Below, piece after piece: positions 18,612 through 34,763 of a stretch of DNA of 64,000 nt. The stretch lies in the sequence record OZ195934.1. One strand, written 5' to 3'. The notes under the pieces are model-generated. The model was not told the origin of the DNA. It was given only the letters and a program-made list of their open reading frames with translations, and did not search any database. Position numbers and translations under genes: made by a program. Position 1 is the stretch's first letter, and each line of letters begins with the position of its first letter.

Positions 18612-18636
18612 AAAAAAAGGACGCTATCTGCGTCCT
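18612..18636 (-). terminator. Rho-independent terminator
   Basis: AGGACGC-AGATA-GCGTCCT-T tract on minus strand. Confidence 0.8.
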
Positions 18637-19148
18637 TTAGTTTTGTTTCTTTTTAGTTTTCGTTTGAGCTTGCGAACTTCTTTACGCTTCGCGATTTTAT
18701 CAGCTCGTCGAACCGCGTCATAATCCGCAGCACAAGACGCTGCAAACGCATCGGGCTTGAATACTGGCTCTTGACCCACATATCCGAAGATCGTGCCCTT
18801 AGCTTCGTTATACGCGACGCTAGACTTGTGTTTAGGGTCTGGGTTAATGTCAACGTGTACTTCAAAGCCGCGAGGGCCGCACATTGGCTTAACTTTCAAC
18901 GCACATTCACCTGCTTTGTATACTTCGTTCATCAAGCGGCTACGAATACCATCAGTAGATGACATATAGGCTTTCTCAGTTTCGATTGTTTTGAATACTT
19001 GAGCGCCTTTACTGCCTTCCAAGTGAATTATGATTACAGTCGCGTAACTGATCATATCACTTTTTCGTTTACTGTCACACCCAACATAGATCGTGCTACT
19101 CGGGTGACTATTTTGAATCGCTGTTTCTACAGCTTCCCAATCGAACAT
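18624..19148 (-). CDS. YkuK/DUF458 RNase H-like protein
   Basis: IYVGCDS, YATVI, RLMNEV, VHVDIN, FKPDAFAASCAAD. Confidence 0.8.
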   Translation of the reverse strand: MFDWEAVETAIQNSHPSSTIYVGCDSKRKSDMISYATVIIIHLEGSKGAQVFKTIETEKAYMSSTDGIRSRLMNEVYKAGECALKVKPMCGPRGFEVHVDINPDPKHKSSVAYNEAKGTIFGYVGQEPVFKPDAFAASCAADYDAVRRADKIAKRKEVRKLKRKLKRNKTKGRR

Positions 19149-19197: not shown

Positions 19198-20631
19198 TTA
19201 TAAAGCGTATCGGTCGACACCGACAGTCTTCAGCATGATTTTCACTGGCTCAAGCTCACCACCCAACAGCGACGTTAGAATTGAAGGGCTGCAACCCGAC
19301 ACTAACGCTGTGTTCGCTTCACCTGATTTAACAGGCACGTTGTCTAGACGACCACGCAAGTTCCAGAACACTAGTTGCGGCATTTCGTAGCCCGCGTTCG
19401 CATACATGACTTTGATTGCATCGAAGTTCGTAGTGTTACGAGTATGCCAGCCACCGCCAGTACGAGCTTGATCGAATTCCATATCGCTCATGATAAGCAA
19501 TTTGGTTGGCATTTCGTCTTGCGACAAGTTTGCCGTACGAGCGCGTTCAAGAAGAACTTCGAAGCATCGTGTGATGTTCGTGCTCATATCTTCGCCAGAT
19601 CGTTGCATGTTGTCAAGACGCGACTTCAAGCTATCACCCGTCAACTTGTGAAAGTGCGGATCACTTGAGAACGAAATGAATTGATCTTTGAAGATACCCT
19701 CATTACGTTCAGCGACGTAGATGCCAAGAGACATCGCAACTTCTTTACAAGTCACACTACCACCGTGTTCACCGTTGATACCACAGCCCATAGAGCCAGA
19801 AACATCAACAACTGGAATCACGCGCTCGTCAGAGCCTTCCATGTAGTTCGGTAGAGCTTTCCATTGCTCATTTGCAACACGATGGTCACCCATTTTAACG
19901 CTGCGAACAACATCGTACGGGTAAACAGCACCTGCATTGATCTTCGCTTCACCTTTCACAAGCGATGTGATGTACTCACCGTATGCAGATTCAGCGTTAC
20001 GACCGAATGCTTTCTGATAGCGTGCAGACGCTACAGATGGCAGTTTGCCGAACTCGATCTCGTCCCAATTACGAGCACACATCTTCTGTTCAACAGTGTC
20101 AGACAAAAGAGAGATCACTTTACGCCACTGCTTCGCGTTTACACCAACCGACTTGATTGTGCGCTTGAACACGATAGCGTTTTTGCTGCGCTCACGAGGA
20201 AACCACTTAGCAGCAAGCGCGTTTTTGTCATTGACAATCGCGTGTGTCCACAGAGTGATAGCATCAGCTTCAAGAGAAGTACCGAACGCAGATACTAAGT
20301 CATCGAAACGACCAAGTTCTGGGATCTTGCGCATAACTAGACGCGCCACTTCTGGTTGTTCTTTACACAGACGTGCAAAGATTTTGCGGAAAGTACCGCG
20401 CTCACCTGCACCGCCACGCACGTCGCGAGACCATAGCAAGATGCGAGTTGCAAGCTCAGGGTTTTCACCGAATGCGCGATTAAACGCAGTTAGTGACTGA
20501 TCATTACCGCGCATAGCGCCGATAGTGAAGAACAAGTTTAGACACTCGTTACCCGAAGTGCTGTGTGTTACTGCACCGTTTGCTGTACGTGAATCGTTAG
20601 ATTGCATAGCGTTCATAAATAAACTAGTCAT
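19198..20631 (-). CDS. DUF2828 Ro60/TROVE-related protein with C-terminal vWA domain
   Basis: RDVRGGAGER, AAKWFPRE, VYPYDV, VVDVSGSM (MIDAS), SDMEFD, LVFWNL; GGAG SD before ATG 20631. Confidence 0.85.
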   Translation of the reverse strand: MTSLFMNAMQSNDSRTANGAVTHSTSGNECLNLFFTIGAMRGNDQSLTAFNRAFGENPELATRILLWSRDVRGGAGERGTFRKIFARLCKEQPEVARLVMRKIPELGRFDDLVSAFGTSLEADAITLWTHAIVNDKNALAAKWFPRERSKNAIVFKRTIKSVGVNAKQWRKVISLLSDTVEQKMCARNWDEIEFGKLPSVASARYQKAFGRNAESAYGEYITSLVKGEAKINAGAVYPYDVVRSVKMGDHRVANEQWKALPNYMEGSDERVIPVVDVSGSMGCGINGEHGGSVTCKEVAMSLGIYVAERNEGIFKDQFISFSSDPHFHKLTGDSLKSRLDNMQRSGEDMSTNITRCFEVLLERARTANLSQDEMPTKLLIMSDMEFDQARTGGGWHTRNTTNFDAIKVMYANAGYEMPQLVFWNLRGRLDNVPVKSGEANTALVSGCSPSILTSLLGGELEPVKIMLKTVGVDRYAL

Positions 20632-20667
20632 TGCTGTAAGCTCCAAATATCAAGGATCAGAAAAATA

Positions 20668-21258
20668 ATGTTTCATATTGTATATCAAATAACAAATTTA
20701 ATAAACAACAAAATTTACGTCGGTAAGCATTCAACCGAAAACATTCATGACGAATACATGGGTTCGGGAAAGCTTTTGCTCAGAGCCATTAAAAAGTATG
20801 GCAAGGAGAATTTCACAAAAGACATACTGTTCGTATCATTAGACGAAAAGGATGCATATAAAGCAGAACATGAGATCGTGAATGAAGATTTTGTTCTCCG
20901 TGAAGACACATATAATCTCAAAGTTGGCGGTCTTGGTGGATCATCAGGAATAGAATCTCCATGCAAAGGTCGTCAACTGAGTGAAGATACTAAACTAAAA
21001 ATGAGAAAAAGTAAACAATTTTCTCAAAAACATTTAGATTATCTCTCAACTAAATTATCTGAGTACAACAAATCTAGACAAGGTGTTCAAAGAGACGATC
21101 TAAAGGGTAACTCAAACCCAATGCATCGAGGTAATTGGCATACACCCCACGGAATATTTGAAACATCAAGCGAAGCAGCGTGTGCCATAAAATGTAGTCA
21201 ATCAACAATTGTTAGACGTTGCAAAAATCCAAATTTTGAGGATTGGTACATCAAATAA
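20668..21258 (+). mobile_element. Free-standing GIY-YIG (Seg-like) homing endonuclease
   Basis: IVYQITNLINNKIYVGKH, YMGSG, YNL; AT-rich, antisense to neighbours. Confidence 0.88.
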
Positions 21259-22197: not shown

Positions 22198-22562
22198 TGA
22201 TAGTCCTTAATGTCGTTGTCGAAGTGACGAATGCACGAGCTATCAAGTCTCGGGCGATCATCGTCTTCAGTGATTGATGGTAGTGTGTAATTATCGTTGA
22301 ACGGCTGACCGCTTGCTTTAGCGATTTCGTACGCGTCTGCACGATTGAAATACTCACCACAATAGTTGATGAAACCTTGCCCGCGATCACCGAGTTCTTT
22401 TCGATGTTCGATTGTACAGCCCGCTTTCTTCAGTGCTTTCATTACACCAGACATGTTGCGACCGAAGTGACAGCTATCAGCTATCACAAGTTCTTCAGTC
22501 GAACCATCGGGGTATGTTACGCGTATCGCGTTTGCAGCAGCAGAAATAATGTTTACGTGCAT
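22194..22562 (-). CDS. Conserved hypothetical phage protein
   Basis: QGFINYCGEYFNRADAYEIA..GQ pattern. Confidence 0.6.
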   Translation of the reverse strand: MHVNIISAAANAIRVTYPDGSTEELVIADSCHFGRNMSGVMKALKKAGCTIEHRKELGDRGQGFINYCGEYFNRADAYEIAKASGQPFNDNYTLPSITEDDDRPRLDSSCIRHFDNDIKDYQ

Positions 22563-22909
22563 GTATCGAGCCTCATAAAAATGTTACCGATTTTCTTGTA
22601 CTGTTTAGACGCCATGATCATGTTCGTCATCTTCAAGTTACCGACCGGATTGCTCGTTACAAGAACAATCGTGTACGGATAATTGCGATGATCCATAGCG
22701 TGTGATAGAATATCGCTTCCCTCTTTGCCGACTACATCACCGAGATCATTGTCCATTAGCAACGTAATGTCAGTCAAGTTCGTGTGCTTCACGAAATTCA
22801 TTCCCTGTTCGAACGTTCGAAGTGTCAGCTTTTGAGCTGCATTCACTGTGTCGTTCGTCAACTTGTTGATGTCTCGAAGATCATCAATCAAAATATACAT
22901 GTGTTTCAT
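22553..22909 (-). CDS. Cyclic-phosphate-processing receiver (cREC)-like protein
   Basis: ILIDDLR, LMDNDLG, EGSDIL, TSNPVG match stand-alone receiver pattern LDD.R / DHDLG / S.Np.G. Confidence 0.7.
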   Translation of the reverse strand: MKHMYILIDDLRDINKLTNDTVNAAQKLTLRTFEQGMNFVKHTNLTDITLLMDNDLGDVVGKEGSDILSHAMDHRNYPYTIVLVTSNPVGNLKMTNMIMASKQYKKIGNIFMRLDTCT

Positions 22910-23155
22910 TACACAACCTCTAACCAATATGCTAATTCATTTGCTGAAGCTAAAGCAGGCGTATAAGAAATCCAGTAGTCTAGATTCTGAGTCATCGACT
23001 CAAGATAGCAATACTCTGAGTCTGCGCTGAAACGATAAATAAACTCATCGTCTTTATACGCATCGACCACTTTAGAACGAGGATTGACTTTAACATCGAA
23101 CCCCGCGTTCTTAAACAACGCAATTGCTGTCTCGTGTTCTGCTTCAAGTAGCGTC
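22909..23155 (-). CDS. Hypothetical protein
   Basis: ORF from MTLLEAEH downstream of a TTGACA promoter. Confidence 0.55.
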
Positions 23156-29735: not shown

Positions 29736-29810
29736 TGGCGGACGTGGAGAATTTCGAAATCTCGACCCCGGTGTTAACAGCACCGCGCTCTGCCTCTGAG
29801 CTACACATCC
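29736..29810 (-). tRNA. tRNA-Asn(GTT)
   Basis: Cloverleaf, loop CTGTTAA, G73. Confidence 0.94.
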
Positions 29811-30723: not shown

Positions 30724-30963
30724 TTATTTTTTAAAGTGCTTTCTTTTATTGCACTCAGCTAAGATTTCATTGTCATAATGATTCTGAAGCTGCTTGAATT
30801 TCTTGTGCTGATCTGGCGTTAGCTCATTCTCATCACGAAGATTTTTCAAGAACCCAAGAGGTTTACGAAACGACTTGCGATACGAGTCTAAACGCTGATC
30901 AGTCAAACCGACTAGTTGTTTAGGCGTTAGCAATGTCTTATTAATGTCAAAGTTCTTACTCAT
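30724..30963 (-). CDS. Hypothetical basic protein
   Basis: 79-aa ORF with AAGGGG SD. Confidence 0.65.
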   Translation of the reverse strand: MSKNFDINKTLLTPKQLVGLTDQRLDSYRKSFRKPLGFLKNLRDENELTPDQHKKFKQLQNHYDNEILAECNKRKHFKK

Positions 30964-30985: not shown

Positions 30986-31100
30986 TGGCTGACCGATGCG
31001 GGACTCGAACCCACGACCACGTGCTTAACAGGCAATTAGAAATGCGGTAGCGATACTTATCAATATCATTTACGTGCTCTACCACTGAGCTAATCGGTCA
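30986..31100 (-). ncRNA. tRNA-Asn(GTT)-like RNA with 38-nt insertion after nt 28
   Basis: Removing 31035-31072 restores CGTGC-CTGTTAA-GCACG arm; 8-bp acceptor, G73, CCA. Confidence 0.8.
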
Positions 31101-32623: not shown

Positions 32624-32989
32624 TTATGTTTCTAGCCATCTACCAATCTTTGCAGCGAAGATGTTTTCTTCTTCGTTGATTAGCGCAGTCGATTTCATTT
32701 GATGAAACATATCTTGCTTGTGAAGCGTATCAAGTTTGACTGCACATTGCAACAACTCTTTTACGCTTCGCATAATTTCTTCTGAATCAAGCTGCGACGT
32801 TTCAGGATGATAAATCAAATTCTGAAGCACAGCTTCTATGTTGCCGTAACAACCCATACCAATAAAATTGATGATAAGTCGATACTGCATTTCTACTGAG
32901 AATGAACAATGCTTGCGCAAATTGCGCTTAACGACTTCACATACTAGCAACTTCTCTTCGAGTTCTTGCTTTATTGCTGTAAACTTCAT
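32624..32989 (-). CDS. Hypothetical protein
   Basis: 121-aa ORF with GAGGTG SD. Confidence 0.65.
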   Translation of the reverse strand: MKFTAIKQELEEKLLVCEVVKRNLRKHCSFSVEMQYRLIINFIGMGCYGNIEAVLQNLIYHPETSQLDSEEIMRSVKELLQCAVKLDTLHKQDMFHQMKSTALINEEENIFAAKIGRWLET

Positions 32990-33005: not shown

Positions 33006-33128
33006 TGGTGGAGAGTGCGGGATTCGAACCACGCGGCCAAAAGATTTACTTAGTTAGTGTTTGCAGCATGAATACTTGACAATATTCTGTCAACGTTCTT
33101 TTGCTCTACCAGACTGAGCTAACTCTCC
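33006..33128 (-). ncRNA. tRNA-Tyr(GTA)-like RNA with ~45-nt insertion in anticodon loop
   Basis: Canonical acceptor, D and T arms; AAAGA/TCTTT stem enclosing 52 nt that end AAGTAAA. Confidence 0.8.
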
Positions 33129-33140
33129 ATTTAAAACACA

Positions 33141-33264
33141 TTGAGCAGGGTGCAGGATTCGAACCTGCGTCACGATCTTAGAATGATATGCTGTTTGGGT
33201 TGCTGAATACAAGCTATACAACTTGCGTTTATGCTACGTGTGCTAGCCACTACACCAACCCTGC
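33141..33264 (-). ncRNA. tRNA-Arg(TCT)-like RNA with 49-nt insertion after nt 28
   Basis: Removing 33188-33236 gives CGATC-ATTCTAA-GATCG; ends CAA; 17-bp flanking IR. Confidence 0.8.
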
Positions 33265-33517: not shown

Positions 33518-33639
33518 TGGTCGTGCGTACTAGAATCGAACTAGTCCTACGATCTCCTAATGATATGCGTTATTGGTTGCTGAATACTTACTTGTCAGTA
33601 AGCGTTATGCTACGTGTGCTGCCACTACACCAACGCACG
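33518..33639 (-). ncRNA. tRNA-Leu(TAG)-like RNA with 48-nt insertion after nt 28
   Basis: Removing 33565-33612 gives CGATC-ATTAGGA-GATCG; ACCA end; 21-bp perfect flanking IR. Confidence 0.8.
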
Positions 33640-34063: not shown

Positions 34064-34315
34064 TTACGATTGAATGATAATACCGCTTTCCGTCTCACCG
34101 CGCTCAAGAGCTGCGTGCTTAATCTGTAGTTGTGCTACTGCTTGTTGAAGTTCTGTGATCGTCTGATCATATAGCTTCATGTTGCTTTGCATGTGTTTAA
34201 TCTGATCGCTCTGCAAACCAACGATATAGGTAAGCAAGATGATGCTTTCATTATCTTGCAGTTCTTCACCGTCGTTGTATTTCTTCAGAACAGATTGGAT
34301 TGTAATATCAGCCAT
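34064..34315 (-). CDS. Coiled-coil hypothetical protein
   Basis: ORF from MADITIQ. Confidence 0.6.
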   Translation of the reverse strand: MADITIQSVLKKYNDGEELQDNESIILLTYIVGLQSDQIKHMQSNMKLYDQTITELQQAVAQLQIKHAALERGETESGIIIQS

Positions 34316-34763
34316 TGTTTTCAGCCCATGACAAATCGAGTGGTTCAACGTATTCGTCTACAAGTCGAACTTCGGCTTCGACGAACAAGGGAGTGATTGC
34401 ATCGTCATACGAAAGCGTGACGTGCGGAGTATAGTCAGGGTAATCGTGAGTACCACCGATAGAGATAAGGTCTTCATGACGCGCTACAAGCTCAGGACAT
34501 TTCATCTTCGCAACAACTGCGTGATTACCGTCTTGAGTTTTCCAGCAATCGATATACTCAATAGTTGCTACGAATGTCGTATCAACGGCAGGCACATCAA
34601 TTTGATTGCGACTGTATAGAACAGTGACGTGAAATTTATCTGGATCTAAAGGATTTGCTAGACGAAGCGATGTCTGCAAGCGAACTAACTCTTGTTTACT
34701 CGATTCGTCTAGTTTGATACCAACGTACGTCCCCTGACTTTCAAGGAACGTAGATAGTTTCAT
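34308..34763 (-). CDS. acb1: 2H phosphoesterase, T4 57B / anti-CBASS Acb1 family
   Basis: Two HxT motifs (FHVTVLYSR, PHVTLSY); synteny 57B-57A-1-3. Confidence 0.85.
   Translation of the reverse strand: MKLSTFLESQGTYVGIKLDESSKQELVRLQTSLRLANPLDPDKFHVTVLYSRNQIDVPAVDTTFVATIEYIDCWKTQDGNHAVVAKMKCPELVARHEDLISIGGTHDYPDYTPHVTLSYDDAITPLFVEAEVRLVDEYVEPLDLSWAENNG

What the first reader, a model, noticed from the sequence alone, without database searches (positions are those of the whole stretch)
30986..31100. tRNA-Asn-like gene with 38-nt insertion after position 28 and an 8-bp acceptor stem
Deleting TAAATG...CTAAT (31035-31072) restores a perfect CGTGC-CTGTTAA-GCACG arm with G73-CCA. The insert has an AAATG/CATTT stem around a GATATT/AGTATC hairpin followed by GCTACC, a degenerate motif. 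The acceptor is 8 bp (TGACCGAT/ATCGGTCA). An intact tRNA-Asn(GTT) exists at 29736, so this copy is not needed for decoding. It may be a decoy, a Ro-tethered mimic, or an intron-containing tRNA at an unusual site.
Basis: partly seen in the sequence, partly recalled or inferred. Interest (0 to 1): 0.8.

Follow-up and report, generated by a model that had tools for sequence, protein, structure and literature searches.

The report
tRNA-shaped partner RNA for phage Ro protein
The 'tRNA-Asn with an insert' is real: it is one of four conserved tRNA-shaped RNAs in this Vibrio phage whose extra arm carries a motif that travels with a phage Ro60-like protein gene, so it is most likely a new form of Y RNA and neither a broken nor an intron-bearing tRNA.

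Summary
Window 31100-30986 (minus strand) is a full tRNA cloverleaf (Rfam tRNA, 49 bits) with 38 nt inserted between positions 28 and 29. The window is a KVP40-like Vibrio myovirus; KVP40 annotates the orthologue as 'tRNA-Pseudo-3'.

It is not decaying. Orthologues keep the insert, with compensatory changes in the acceptor, T, split anticodon and insert stems. The window holds four such RNAs (A-D).

All four share one module: an A-rich lead, a 7-bp hairpin capped by GNNA, then N-U-N-C-N-GCA at a fixed 12 nt from the loop. A pattern scan of IMG/VR returned 80 loci (the cap). Nearly all are tRNA-like scaffolds carrying this module.

Their commonest neighbour is a DUF2828/DUF7788 protein, which the window also encodes (19198-20646, same strand). 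Its AlphaFold model matches Ro60 structures over its full length.

The reverse test agrees. In 45 of 67 loci found through this protein, the motif lies within 120 nt downstream of the gene (8.5% in controls). There it is circularly permuted, so the helix is closed by the RNA's 5' and 3' regions, as in Y RNAs.

Best reading: a tRNA-embedded Y-RNA analogue that docks the phage Ro-like protein. Binding itself is inferred, not shown. This is a new variant of a known kind.

The parts
30986..31100 (-). Long tRNA-like RNA 'A' (the finding). Asn-like cloverleaf with anticodon-like loop CUGUUAA and a 38-nt module between positions 28 and 29. Body 31099-30991, then A-GCCA.
   Evidence: Rfam tRNA 49.1 bits. 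Orthologue alignment A1. RNAalifold.
31051..31068 (-). Module hairpin of A: 7-bp stem UGAUAUU/AGUAUCG capped by the GAUA tetraloop.
   Evidence: and alignment A3. 96% of cells paired, all 7 pairs show compensatory changes, 0 of 500 shuffles reach this.
31043..31050 (-). Conserved single-stranded motif of A: C-U-A-C-C-G-C-A (N-U-N-C-N-GCA). GCA starts exactly 12 nt after the tetraloop.
   Evidence: U, C and GCA are invariant in 26 of 26 module copies. The same motif lies downstream of Ro-like genes.
33009..33128 (-). Long tRNA-like RNA 'B'. The module sits inside the 'loop' closed by stem AAAGA/UCUUU. The 3' end is A-CCA. Module at 33056-33095.
   Evidence: Rfam tRNA 49.8 bits; R1 38.8 bits.
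33145..33264 (-). Long tRNA-like RNA 'C'. Module between positions 28 and 29, followed by the mini-hairpin AUC-AUUCUAA-GAU. Module at 33195-33234.
   Evidence: R1 37.4 bits.
33522..33639 (-). Long tRNA-like RNA 'D'. Module between positions 28 and 29, followed by the mini-hairpin AUC-AUUAGGA-GAU. The 3' end is A-CCA. Module at 33572-33611.
   Evidence: R1 46.5 bits.
19198..20646 (-). Ro60-like RNA-binding protein: a helical-repeat ring plus a vWA domain with a DxSxS MIDAS motif. Pfam DUF2828 + DUF7788. The tblastn match in near-identical phage D480 corresponds to about 19201-20580.
   Evidence: Pfam 4e-26 and 2.8e-46. (AF2 pLDDT 82.5, pTM 0.83). (Foldseek top five hits are all Ro60, probability 1.0). 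(MIDAS invariant). (annotated 'Ro-like RNA binding protein' in phage records).
18624..19148 (-). PF04308 RNase H-like protein directly downstream of the Ro-like gene. A possible effector partner.
   Evidence: 1.1e-17. The same family neighbours module-bearing tRNA-likes in 10 IMG/VR loci.
22553..22927 (-). cREC_REC protein (cyclic-phosphate-processing receiver domain), lying between the tRNA cluster and the Ro-like gene. Context only.
   Evidence: 1.2e-12.

Best explanation
The element is a functional, conserved non-coding RNA and not a decaying or intron-bearing tRNA gene. It is a complete tRNA cloverleaf. That body is likely processed and stabilised like the phage's other tRNAs, which is inferred. 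Its anticodon stem carries a side arm. The side arm is a 7-bp helix capped by a G..A-closed tetraloop, followed at a fixed distance by the single-stranded motif N-U-N-C-N-GCA(A). This is the same RNA element that lies next to genes for the phage Ro60-like (DUF2828/DUF7788) protein in many phages. There it forms the terminal stem of a Y-RNA-like transcript. I therefore read the four window RNAs (A-D) as tRNA-embedded Y-RNA analogues. The module docks the phage Ro-like ring encoded at 19198-20646. The tRNA-shaped body, with its anticodon-like loop, acts as the tether or bait for a tRNA-binding partner. Candidate partners are a host exoribonuclease such as PNPase (as in Ro-Y RNA-PNPase complexes), the neighbouring RNase H-like protein, or a host tRNA-targeting defence factor. 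Shown here: the structure, its conservation and covariation, the genomic co-location, and the Ro60 fold of the protein. Inferred: physical binding, the identity of the tethered partner, and the biological outcome.
For: (1) Conservation with compensation. In nine KVP40-like phages the insert is kept, with double changes in the acceptor stem, T stem, insert hairpin (GAUAC/GUAUC versus GAUUC/GAAUC) and anticodon pair 29:41 (U:A to A:U). Across the wider set the two halves of the split stem covary (27-28/42-43 = AU/AU, CU/AG, CG/CG, AC/GU, CC/GG, UU/AA).
(2) Four paralogues in the window, five in KVP40 and five in D479, all carry the module.
(3) The hairpin is 96% paired with 7 of 7 pairs compensatory, against 35-48% paired when slid. 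G of the loop and U, C, GCA are invariant.
(4) A covariance model of the module hits only these four places in 64 kb.
(5) An IMG/VR pattern scan returned 80 loci, the cap. Nearly all are tRNA-like scaffolds with the module.
(6) The commonest neighbouring protein (18 loci) is DUF2828+DUF7788. In all 14 loci where the strict module pattern was detected (of those 18), the RNA is on the gene's strand, and in 11 of them it lies within 0.15-2.7 kb.
(7) The window encodes this protein. Its model matches Ro60 of Thermus phage phiLo and of Xenopus over the full length.
(8) Reverse test: 45 of 67 loci found through the protein have U.C.GCA within 120 nt downstream, against 8.5% of 18,368 control windows. 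These instances share unsearched positions with the module: A-9, G-7, U-4 (40 of 40) and A+7 (38 of 40). The 7 nt before the motif pair with a perfectly complementary 7-mer followed by G, 36-160 nt downstream, in many covarying versions.
(9) Precedent: a mycobacteriophage DUF2828 'Ro-like' gene is followed by a YrlA-like RNA. phiLo Ro60 binds two phage Y-like RNAs and host PNPase (PMC12135203). For Bas63, some tRNA genes next to its Ro60-like gp130 have been suggested to be Y RNAs (10.1101/2024.10.10.617714).
Against: No binding, expression or processing data exist for these RNAs. In this window the Ro-like gene is 10.3 kb from A, not adjacent. The motif differs from the known Ro-binding motifs (GNCGAAN0-1G in YrlA, GGUCCGA in animals). 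A FelixO1-like phage with the Ro-like gene beside its tRNA cluster shows no module, so the pairing is not universal for the protein family. The anticodon-like loops keep U33 and a canonical shape and vary mainly at positions 34-36 within one scaffold family. That pattern would also fit real decoding tRNAs. Co-location cannot tell whether the module binds the Ro-like protein or another co-inherited factor.
Confidence: 0.65

Rival explanations
1. Intron-containing tRNA. The 38-50-nt module is an intervening sequence, removed by an unknown phage or host endonuclease plus a ligase (or by self-cleavage). This would yield ordinary decoding tRNAs such as Asn-GUU, Arg-UCU and Leu-UAG.
For: Removing the insert restores a perfect 5-bp anticodon stem with a 7-nt loop. 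All but one of the 7-nt anticodon-like loops at split stems keep U33. One scaffold family shows loops AU-NNN-AA with six different triplets. 'Enigmatic' conserved tRNA introns have been reported in Lak megaphages (10.1101/356790).
Against: The same motif occurs outside tRNAs, as the terminal helix of RNAs directly downstream of Ro-like genes, where there are no exons to join. No bulge-helix-bulge can be drawn consistently across orthologues. There is no group I or ribozyme match in Rfam. In types B and Pseudo-5 the module fills the whole 'loop' and leaves no clean anticodon loop. Some copies have 8-nt loops or C33. All four would duplicate canonical tRNAs in the same cluster. The neighbouring '57B RNA ligase' is in fact Acb1.
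Confidence: 0.1
2. A tRNA-scaffolded aptamer or decoy for a different partner. The module binds some other host or phage factor, for example an anticodon nuclease, another tRNA-targeting defence protein or the PF04308 RNase H-like protein. The link to the Ro-like gene is only shared ancestry of a gene block.
For: The anticodon-like loops mimic tRNAs that are common nuclease targets, and they diversify. PF04308 co-occurs in 10 loci and in the window. Phage tRNA clusters are known to counter tRNA-targeting defences (my own knowledge, not tested here).
Against: Across clades whose other neighbours differ (ClpP, DnaJ and unknowns), the motif still sits within about 35-100 nt of the stop codon of the Ro-like gene. 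That is the classic position of a Y RNA. No other protein family tracks the motif as widely.
Confidence: 0.17
3. A tRNA pseudogene disrupted by a chance insertion, as annotated in KVP40 and related genomes.
For: GenBank labels it 'tRNA-Pseudo-3' or 'tRNA-OTHER'. ARAGORN does not call it.
Against: The insert is conserved with compensatory substitutions in phages only 77-80% identical in this region. It is multi-copy and found in many unrelated phage contigs with the same invariant letters.
Confidence: 0.01

Closest known systems
YrlA, the bacterial and mycobacteriophage tRNA-like Y RNA (Rfam RF02553; Chen et al. 2014, PMC4201824)
   Same: It is a non-coding RNA that combines tRNA-like D and T arms with a helix-plus-motif element. 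It is encoded on the same strand as a Ro60 orthologue. It is expected to dock the Ro ring and tether a second factor.
   Different: YrlA is circularly permuted relative to tRNA: its ends lie in the Ro-binding stem and it has no anticodon loop. Its motif is GNCGAAN0-1G, and it lies within 4 kb of the Ro gene. Here the tRNA is not permuted: the ends form the acceptor stem, often with an encoded CCA. The Ro-type element is a capped side arm inside the anticodon stem, and an anticodon-like loop is retained. The motif is N-U-N-C-N-GCA(A), there are 4-5 paralogues, and the distance to the Ro gene is 0.15-12 kb. The Rfam YrlA model does not hit A. The 28-bit hit at 33070-33196 is the tandem-tRNA artefact that Chen et al. 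warn about.
phiLo Ro60 with Yrl1/Yrl2 from a Thermus phage (PMC12135203; PDB 9KOP, 9L5Y)
   Same: It is a phage-encoded Ro60-fold protein with phage-encoded partner RNAs next to the gene. It is the best structural match to the window protein. It assembles with host PNPase in vitro.
   Different: Yrl1 and Yrl2 are stem-bulge-stem Y RNAs with a CGAA motif, not tRNA cloverleaves. The proteins share only about 15% sequence identity.
Bas63 (Felixounavirus) gp130, a Ro60-like protein upstream of the tRNA cluster (10.1101/2024.10.10.617714)
   Same: It is the same protein family beside a phage tRNA cluster (one search lists Felixounavirus records, and one search shows the layout). The authors suggest that some of the 'tRNA genes' may be Y RNAs, and they show that gp130 counters the ppl defence system.
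   Different: No RNA element was defined there. The module found here is absent from the FelixO1-like region I scanned.
T4 stable RNAs rnaC and rnaD (species 1 and 2)
   Same: They are stable RNAs of unknown function, co-located with the tRNA cluster of a T4-type phage, with partial tRNA-like 3' ends.
   Different: They have no module (R1 finds nothing in the T4 tRNA region) and are not full cloverleaves.
Artificial 'tRNA scaffold' for displaying RNA aptamers in the anticodon arm (from my own knowledge)
   Same: A functional RNA module is grafted into the anticodon arm of a tRNA body that supplies folding, processing and stability.
   Different: That scaffold is an engineering device. This is a natural, widely conserved phage RNA family.

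Membership tests
tRNA (RF00005) | Covariance-model score above the curated threshold. | tested here: met
   49.1 bits against a cut-off of 29, with a 49-nt insertion in the anticodon arm.
tRNA (RF00005) | 7-bp acceptor stem, D arm with GG, and T arm with UUCRA, all supported by covariation. | tested here: met
tRNA (RF00005) | A continuous 5-bp anticodon stem with a 7-nt loop, fit for decoding. | tested here: not met
   The stem is split 2 + 3 bp by a 38-nt structured arm. ARAGORN does not call it.
tRNA (RF00005) | Aminoacylation and use on the ribosome. | not testable with these tools
   This needs acid-urea northern blots or tRNA-seq.
YrlA (RF02553) | Covariance-model score above threshold (69 bits). 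| tested here: not met
   No YrlA hit on A. The only hit is 28.2 bits, spanning the T arm of C and the D arm of B, which is a tandem artefact.
YrlA (RF02553) | Permuted topology: the 5' and 3' ends form the Ro-binding stem, and the T arm precedes the D arm. | tested here: not met
   The order is the normal tRNA order and the ends lie in the acceptor stem.
YrlA (RF02553) | GNCGAAN0-1G motif. | tested here: not met
   The module motif is N-U-N-C-N-GCA(A).
Y RNA (functional class: partner of a Ro60 protein) | A Ro60 orthologue encoded in the same genome, on the same strand. | tested here: met
   Window 19198-20646 (-). Ro60 fold.
Y RNA (functional class: partner of a Ro60 protein) | A conserved helix-plus-motif element that co-locates with Ro genes across genomes. 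| tested here: met
   45 of 67 against 8.5% in controls. Shared unsearched positions. A covarying helix. 14 of 14 on the same strand.
Y RNA (functional class: partner of a Ro60 protein) | Physical binding to Ro60. | not testable with these tools
   This needs RIP, CLIP or gel-shift assays.
Ro60 / TROVE protein (for the partner gene) | A helical-repeat ring followed by a vWA domain with a MIDAS motif. | tested here: met
   AF2 model pTM 0.83. The top five Foldseek hits are Ro60, aligned over about 510-570 columns. DxSxS is invariant. Sequence-only searches are weak (profile E = 0.02 to the phiLo TROVE protein). Pfam files it under DUF2828/DUF7788, not TROVE.
Archaeal/eukaryotic-type tRNA intron | A bulge-helix-bulge (3-4-3) at both exon-intron junctions. 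| tested here: not met
   By inspection of alignments A1 and A6, the pairs that close the insert differ in register among orthologues and no 3-4-3 motif can be drawn.
Group I intron in tRNA | A group I ribozyme core (over 200 nt) in the anticodon loop. | tested here: not met
   The insert is 38 nt, lies in the stem, and has no Rfam match.
tmRNA-like | G3:U70 alanine identity and a conserved tag reading frame starting at the GCA codon. | tested here: not met
   Pair 3:70 is C:G in A and A:U in B. Frames from GCA are not conserved, because orthologues differ by 1-2-nt indels.
tRNA pseudogene | No selective constraint on the disrupted part. | tested here: not met
   The insert is conserved with compensatory changes.

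The most novel reading that the evidence does not exclude
The RNAs do both jobs. They would be charged, anticodon-bearing tRNAs (or exact tRNA baits with swappable 'anticodons') that carry a docking arm for the Ro-like ring. The phage Ro particle would then be aimed at the translation or tRNA-surveillance machinery. For example, it could capture or neutralise host anticodon nucleases and other tRNA-targeting defences isoacceptor by isoacceptor, or police the phage's own 26-tRNA set. That would be a programmable, tRNA-addressed Ro RNP, a mode of action not described for any Y RNA.
Probability: 0.15. Interest if true: 0.9.

Novelty: new variant of a known kind. Interest (0 to 1): 0.7.

Why it matters
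Ro60-like (DUF2828) genes occur in at least 710 sequenced phage genomes, including Felixounaviruses, Listeria, Staphylococcus, Campylobacter and T4-type phages. One of these proteins has been shown to counter a bacterial defence system. The cognate RNAs of this protein family are largely unknown.

This work defines a compact sequence-structure motif that tracks the gene, and shows it in two topologies. One is a Y-RNA-like terminal stem. The other is a capped arm grafted into a full tRNA. It explains 'pseudo-tRNAs' that have sat unexplained in KVP40-type and Aeromonas phage annotations since 2003-2006. It also gives an immediate handle for bench work: four short RNAs, one protein and one 8-nt motif to mutate.

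It also warns annotators that long 'tRNA-OTHER' calls in phage tRNA clusters may be regulatory RNAs.

Tried and rejected
- **tmRNA-like reading.** I tested GCA as a resume codon followed by a short ORF. Several copies give short frames (for example B: A-N-T-N-stop), but frames shift between orthologues and there is no G3:U70. Rejected.
- **LigT-type ligase next door.** The T4 57B homologue could have served splicing, but Pfam shows it is Acb1, an anti-CBASS phosphodiesterase.
- **Homology to T4 rnaC/rnaD.** No module is present.
- **Lak megaphage 'enigmatic tRNA introns'.** Lak-C1 has a distant DUF2828 homologue, but the 41 kb around it holds no module and no tRNA. The rest of the 540-kb genome was not scanned.
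- **FelixO1-like UAB_Phi87.** The Ro-like gene abuts the tRNA cluster, but there is no R1 hit.
- **Resemblances recalled from memory.** These were the SRP RNA domain IV 'AGCA', lambda/P22 boxB GNRA-like loops, ToxI antitoxin repeats, the hammerhead core and the K-turn. None fits the invariant positions, and Rfam gave no match other than tRNA.
- **Closing stem AAAUG/CAUUU.** It is not conserved.
- **Pairing partner for GCA.** No conserved UGC partner for GCA was found within the RNA. RNAalifold paired the GC of 'UAGC' with the GC of 'GCAA' in types C to E only. I treat this as unproven.
- **Literature.** The KVP40 genome paper (PMC180978) and the supplement of Chen et al. 2014 are not held, so I could not check whether KVP40-type RNAs were listed there.
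- **Promoter and terminator scan.** The scan around the RNAs was no better than shuffled sequence.

Full report
**What is there.**
The window matches KVP40-like Vibrio myoviruses: 100% identity to phages D482 and 6E35.1a, and about 77% to KVP40. A cluster of 26 canonical tRNA genes lies on the minus strand between 25095 and 32622.

The finding lies on the same strand at 31100-30986. Read 5' to 3', it is a complete cloverleaf. The 5' strand of its anticodon stem is interrupted after C27-G28 by 38 nt (31072-31035). After the insert come U29-G-C31, the loop CUGUUAA and G39-C-A-C-G43. Rfam's tRNA model scores it 49.1 bits with a 49-nt gap, and ARAGORN does not report it. KVP40 annotates the orthologue as 'tRNA-Pseudo-3' and 6E35.1a as 'tRNA-OTHER'. 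A canonical tRNA-Asn(GTT) exists at 29736-29810.

**It is under selection.**
I aligned orthologues from nine phages. The region is only about 77-80% identical between the clades, yet the insert is retained almost letter for letter. Where it changes, it changes in pairs:
- acceptor stem: GACCGAU/AUCGGUC, AGUCGGG/CCCGACU, GGCCGGU/ACCGGCC
- T stem: GUGGG/CCCGC, GCUGG/CCAGC, GUAGG/CCUAC
- insert hairpin: GAUAC/GUAUC against GAUUC/GAAUC
- anticodon pair 29:41: U:A against A:U in phage D479

In the wider set, the two nucleotides before the insert covary with the last two of the 3' strand (AU/AU, CU/AG, CG/CG, AC/GU, CC/GG, UU/AA). So the stem really forms across the insert.

The eighth acceptor pair is specific to this phage lineage. 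Orthologues read as 7 bp + N73 + CCA, like the 26 canonical tRNAs here, nearly all of which encode CCA.

**It is one of four.**
A simple search for acceptor, D and T arms enclosing an over-long anticodon region found four such RNAs in the window: A 30991-31099, B 33009-33128, C 33145-33264 and D 33522-33639. KVP40 has five (two unannotated) and D479 has five.

All of them share one module:
- an A-rich lead
- a 7-bp hairpin whose last pair is U-A, capped by a GNNA tetraloop
- exactly five nucleotides N-U-N-C-N
- an invariant GCA, usually followed by A

The distance from the loop to GCA is always 12 nt. On 26 distinct copies the hairpin is 96% paired, and all seven pairs show compensatory changes. 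None of 500 shuffles reaches this, and slid registers give 35-48%. A covariance model of the 40-nt module (R1), run unfiltered over the whole window, hits only these four places.

The module sits between positions 28 and 29 in A, C and D, leaving a 3-bp mini-hairpin with an anticodon-like loop. In B, and in KVP40 Pseudo-5, it fills the whole 'loop' of a contiguous 5-bp stem.

**It is widespread.**
I scanned IMG/VR with a degenerate pattern joining the module to a T loop. It returned 80 loci, which is the cap. Nearly all are tRNA-like scaffolds with the same module and the same A-rich lead. They include Aeromonas T4-type phages (a 233,234-bp contig, the published length of Aeh1), marine metagenomic phages and contigs of 300-424 kb.

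At split stems, all but one of the 7-nt anticodon-like loops keep U33. One scaffold family carries AU-NNN-AA with six different triplets. Rfam 15 has no family for this apart from tRNA. The literature I could search treats such genes only as 'pseudo' tRNAs (PMC1524935, PMC3468402).

**The link to a Ro60-like protein.**
I clustered all ORFs in the 80 loci. The commonest neighbour (18 loci) is a protein of about 475 aa with Pfam DUF2828 + DUF7788. In all 14 of those loci where the strict module pattern is detected, the RNA is on the gene's strand, and in 11 of them it lies 0.15-2.7 kb away.

tblastn finds this protein in 710 phage records, where it is variously annotated 'Ro-like RNA binding protein', 'RNA-binding protein' or 'vWFA protein'. 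The records include the KVP40-like phages. The window encodes it at 19198-20646 on the minus strand, the same strand as the tRNA cluster and downstream of it. Next to it is a PF04308 RNase H-like gene (18624-19148), a family that recurs in 10 of the IMG/VR loci.

An AlphaFold model (pLDDT 82.5, pTM 0.83) has Ro60 as its five best PDB matches: Thermus phage phiLo 9L5Y/9KOP and Xenopus 1YVR/2I91. These are aligned over essentially the full length with probability 1.0. The vWA MIDAS motif DxSxS is invariant.

**The reverse test.**
I started again from the protein (alignment A4) and fetched 80 further IMG/VR loci. In 45 of 67 usable loci, U.C.GCA lies within 120 nt downstream of the stop codon. 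The figure is 8.5% for 18,368 control windows from the same loci.

Only those five letters were searched. Even so, the instances share further conserved positions with the tRNA-embedded module: A at -9, G at -7, U at -4 (40 of 40) and A at +7 (38 of 40).

In these RNAs there is no local hairpin. The 7 nt preceding the motif instead pair with a perfectly complementary 7-mer followed by G, 36-160 nt downstream. Many covarying versions exist: UGGUUCC/GGAACCA, AAGAUGU/ACAUCUU, AGAAUCG/CGAUUCU, GGAAUGC/GCAUUCC and others.

So this is the same element, circularly permuted. Next to the Ro-like gene, its helix is closed by the RNA's 5' and 3' regions, as in Y RNAs. In the tRNA-likes, it is capped by GNNA and grafted into the anticodon stem.

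As a positive control for the protein family, mycobacteriophage Jubie has a YrlA-like RNA (39 bits) directly after its DUF2828 'Ro-like' gene.

**How it most likely works.**
Shown here: the RNA's structure, its constraint, its multiplicity, its co-location with the gene, and the protein's fold.

Inferred from the established Ro-Y RNA paradigm: the module docks the Ro-like ring, while the rest of the RNA tethers a second factor. In bacteria, YrlA combines a Ro-binding stem with a tRNA-like domain and links Ro to PNPase (PMC4201824). phiLo Ro60 binds two phage Y-like RNAs and host PNPase (PMC12135203). The Ro60-like gp130 of Bas63 counters the ppl defence, and its authors guessed that some neighbouring tRNA genes are Y RNAs (10.1101/2024.10.10.617714).

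Here the tether is a complete tRNA body with an anticodon-like loop. That points to a tRNA-binding partner. The candidates are a host exoribonuclease, the adjacent RNase H-like protein, or a tRNA-directed defence factor. I cannot choose among them.

**Rivals.**
- *Spliced intron.* This would explain the restored stem and the canonical loops. It does not explain the same motif in non-tRNA RNAs beside Ro-like genes, the B-type architecture, the 8-nt and C33 loops, or the absence of any splicing signature.
- *A different binding partner.* This remains possible. Against it, only the Ro-like gene tracks the motif across clades whose other neighbours differ.
- *Pseudogene.* This is excluded by the covariation.

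**Comparison and novelty.**
It works like a Y RNA, and most like YrlA. It fails the membership tests for YrlA on model score, topology and motif (see the membership table). The partner protein is a Ro60-fold protein that Pfam files under DUF2828/DUF7788 rather than TROVE.

I found no description of this motif, or of a Ro-type element embedded in a non-permuted tRNA. The closest statement is the Bas63 speculation. I therefore rate it a new variant of a known kind. The caveats are that the evidence is comparative only, and that two key sources were not available to me: the KVP40 genome paper and the supplement of Chen et al. 2014.

**Verdict.**
Confidence is about 0.95 that this is a selected, structured RNA family. 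Confidence is about 0.65 that the module is the docking site of the phage Ro-like protein.

Noticed in passing
window 34308-34763 (-): The T4 57B homologue, annotated 'RNA ligase' in related genomes, matches Pfam Acb1 (anti-CBASS cyclic-nucleotide phosphodiesterase) at 9.5e-45. It is followed by the 57A and gene 1 homologues, as in T4.
   Followed up: partly
window 22553-22927 (-): A small protein with a cREC_REC 'cyclic-phosphate processing receiver' domain lies between the tRNA cluster and the Ro-like gene. This hints at an RNA-repair or RNA-end-sensing context.
   Followed up: no
window 20668-21258 (+): A GIY-YIG (SegE-like) homing-endonuclease gene on the opposite strand abuts the start of the Ro-like gene. 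GIY-YIG/NUMOD3 genes also recur beside Ro-like genes in 16 IMG/VR loci.
   Followed up: partly
window 33070-33196 (-): The weak Rfam YrlA hit (28 bits) spans the T arm of RNA C and the D arm of RNA B. This is the tandem-tRNA false positive that Chen et al. 2014 describe, not a YrlA gene.
   Followed up: yes
window 30724-30963 (-) and 32624-32989 (-): RNAs A and B are each followed within about 20 nt by a Shine-Dalgarno sequence and the ATG of a small ORF of unknown function (79 aa, phrog_9405; 121 aa, phrog_27428). The same arrangement is seen in KVP40 (Pseudo-3 then KVP40.0316).
   Followed up: partly
L010:10500-10617 (phage D479 orthologue of A): The anticodon-like loop is CCGUUAA, so the near-universal U33 is a C, while the stem pair 29:41 has switched to A:U. 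The loop is therefore less constrained than the stems.
   Followed up: partly
L113, L115, L117 (about 100 nt downstream of the Ro-like gene): Some of the permuted, Ro-adjacent RNAs contain a T-arm-like hairpin (ACAGG-UUCAAAC-CCUGU) between the motif and the closing strand. A partial tRNA-like domain may therefore exist in that topology too.
   Followed up: no
L102, L105, L110 and similar loci (+36 and +96 after the Ro-like gene): Many Ro-adjacent RNAs carry two copies of UACAGCA about 60 nt apart. The second sits in what looks like a GUAC-AGCAAAAA-GUAC hairpin. Its role is unclear.
   Followed up: no
L001:4815-4936 and L001:5205-5323 (KVP40, minus strand): KVP40 has two further module-bearing long tRNA-likes that its GenBank record does not annotate. 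Together with Pseudo-3, -4 and -5 that makes five.
   Followed up: yes
L180 (Prevotella phage Lak-C1, 5589-46836): Lak-C1 encodes a distant DUF2828 homologue (25.7% identity). The 41 kb around it has no module and no tRNA. Whether the published 'enigmatic tRNA introns' of Lak phages relate to this module remains open.
   Followed up: partly
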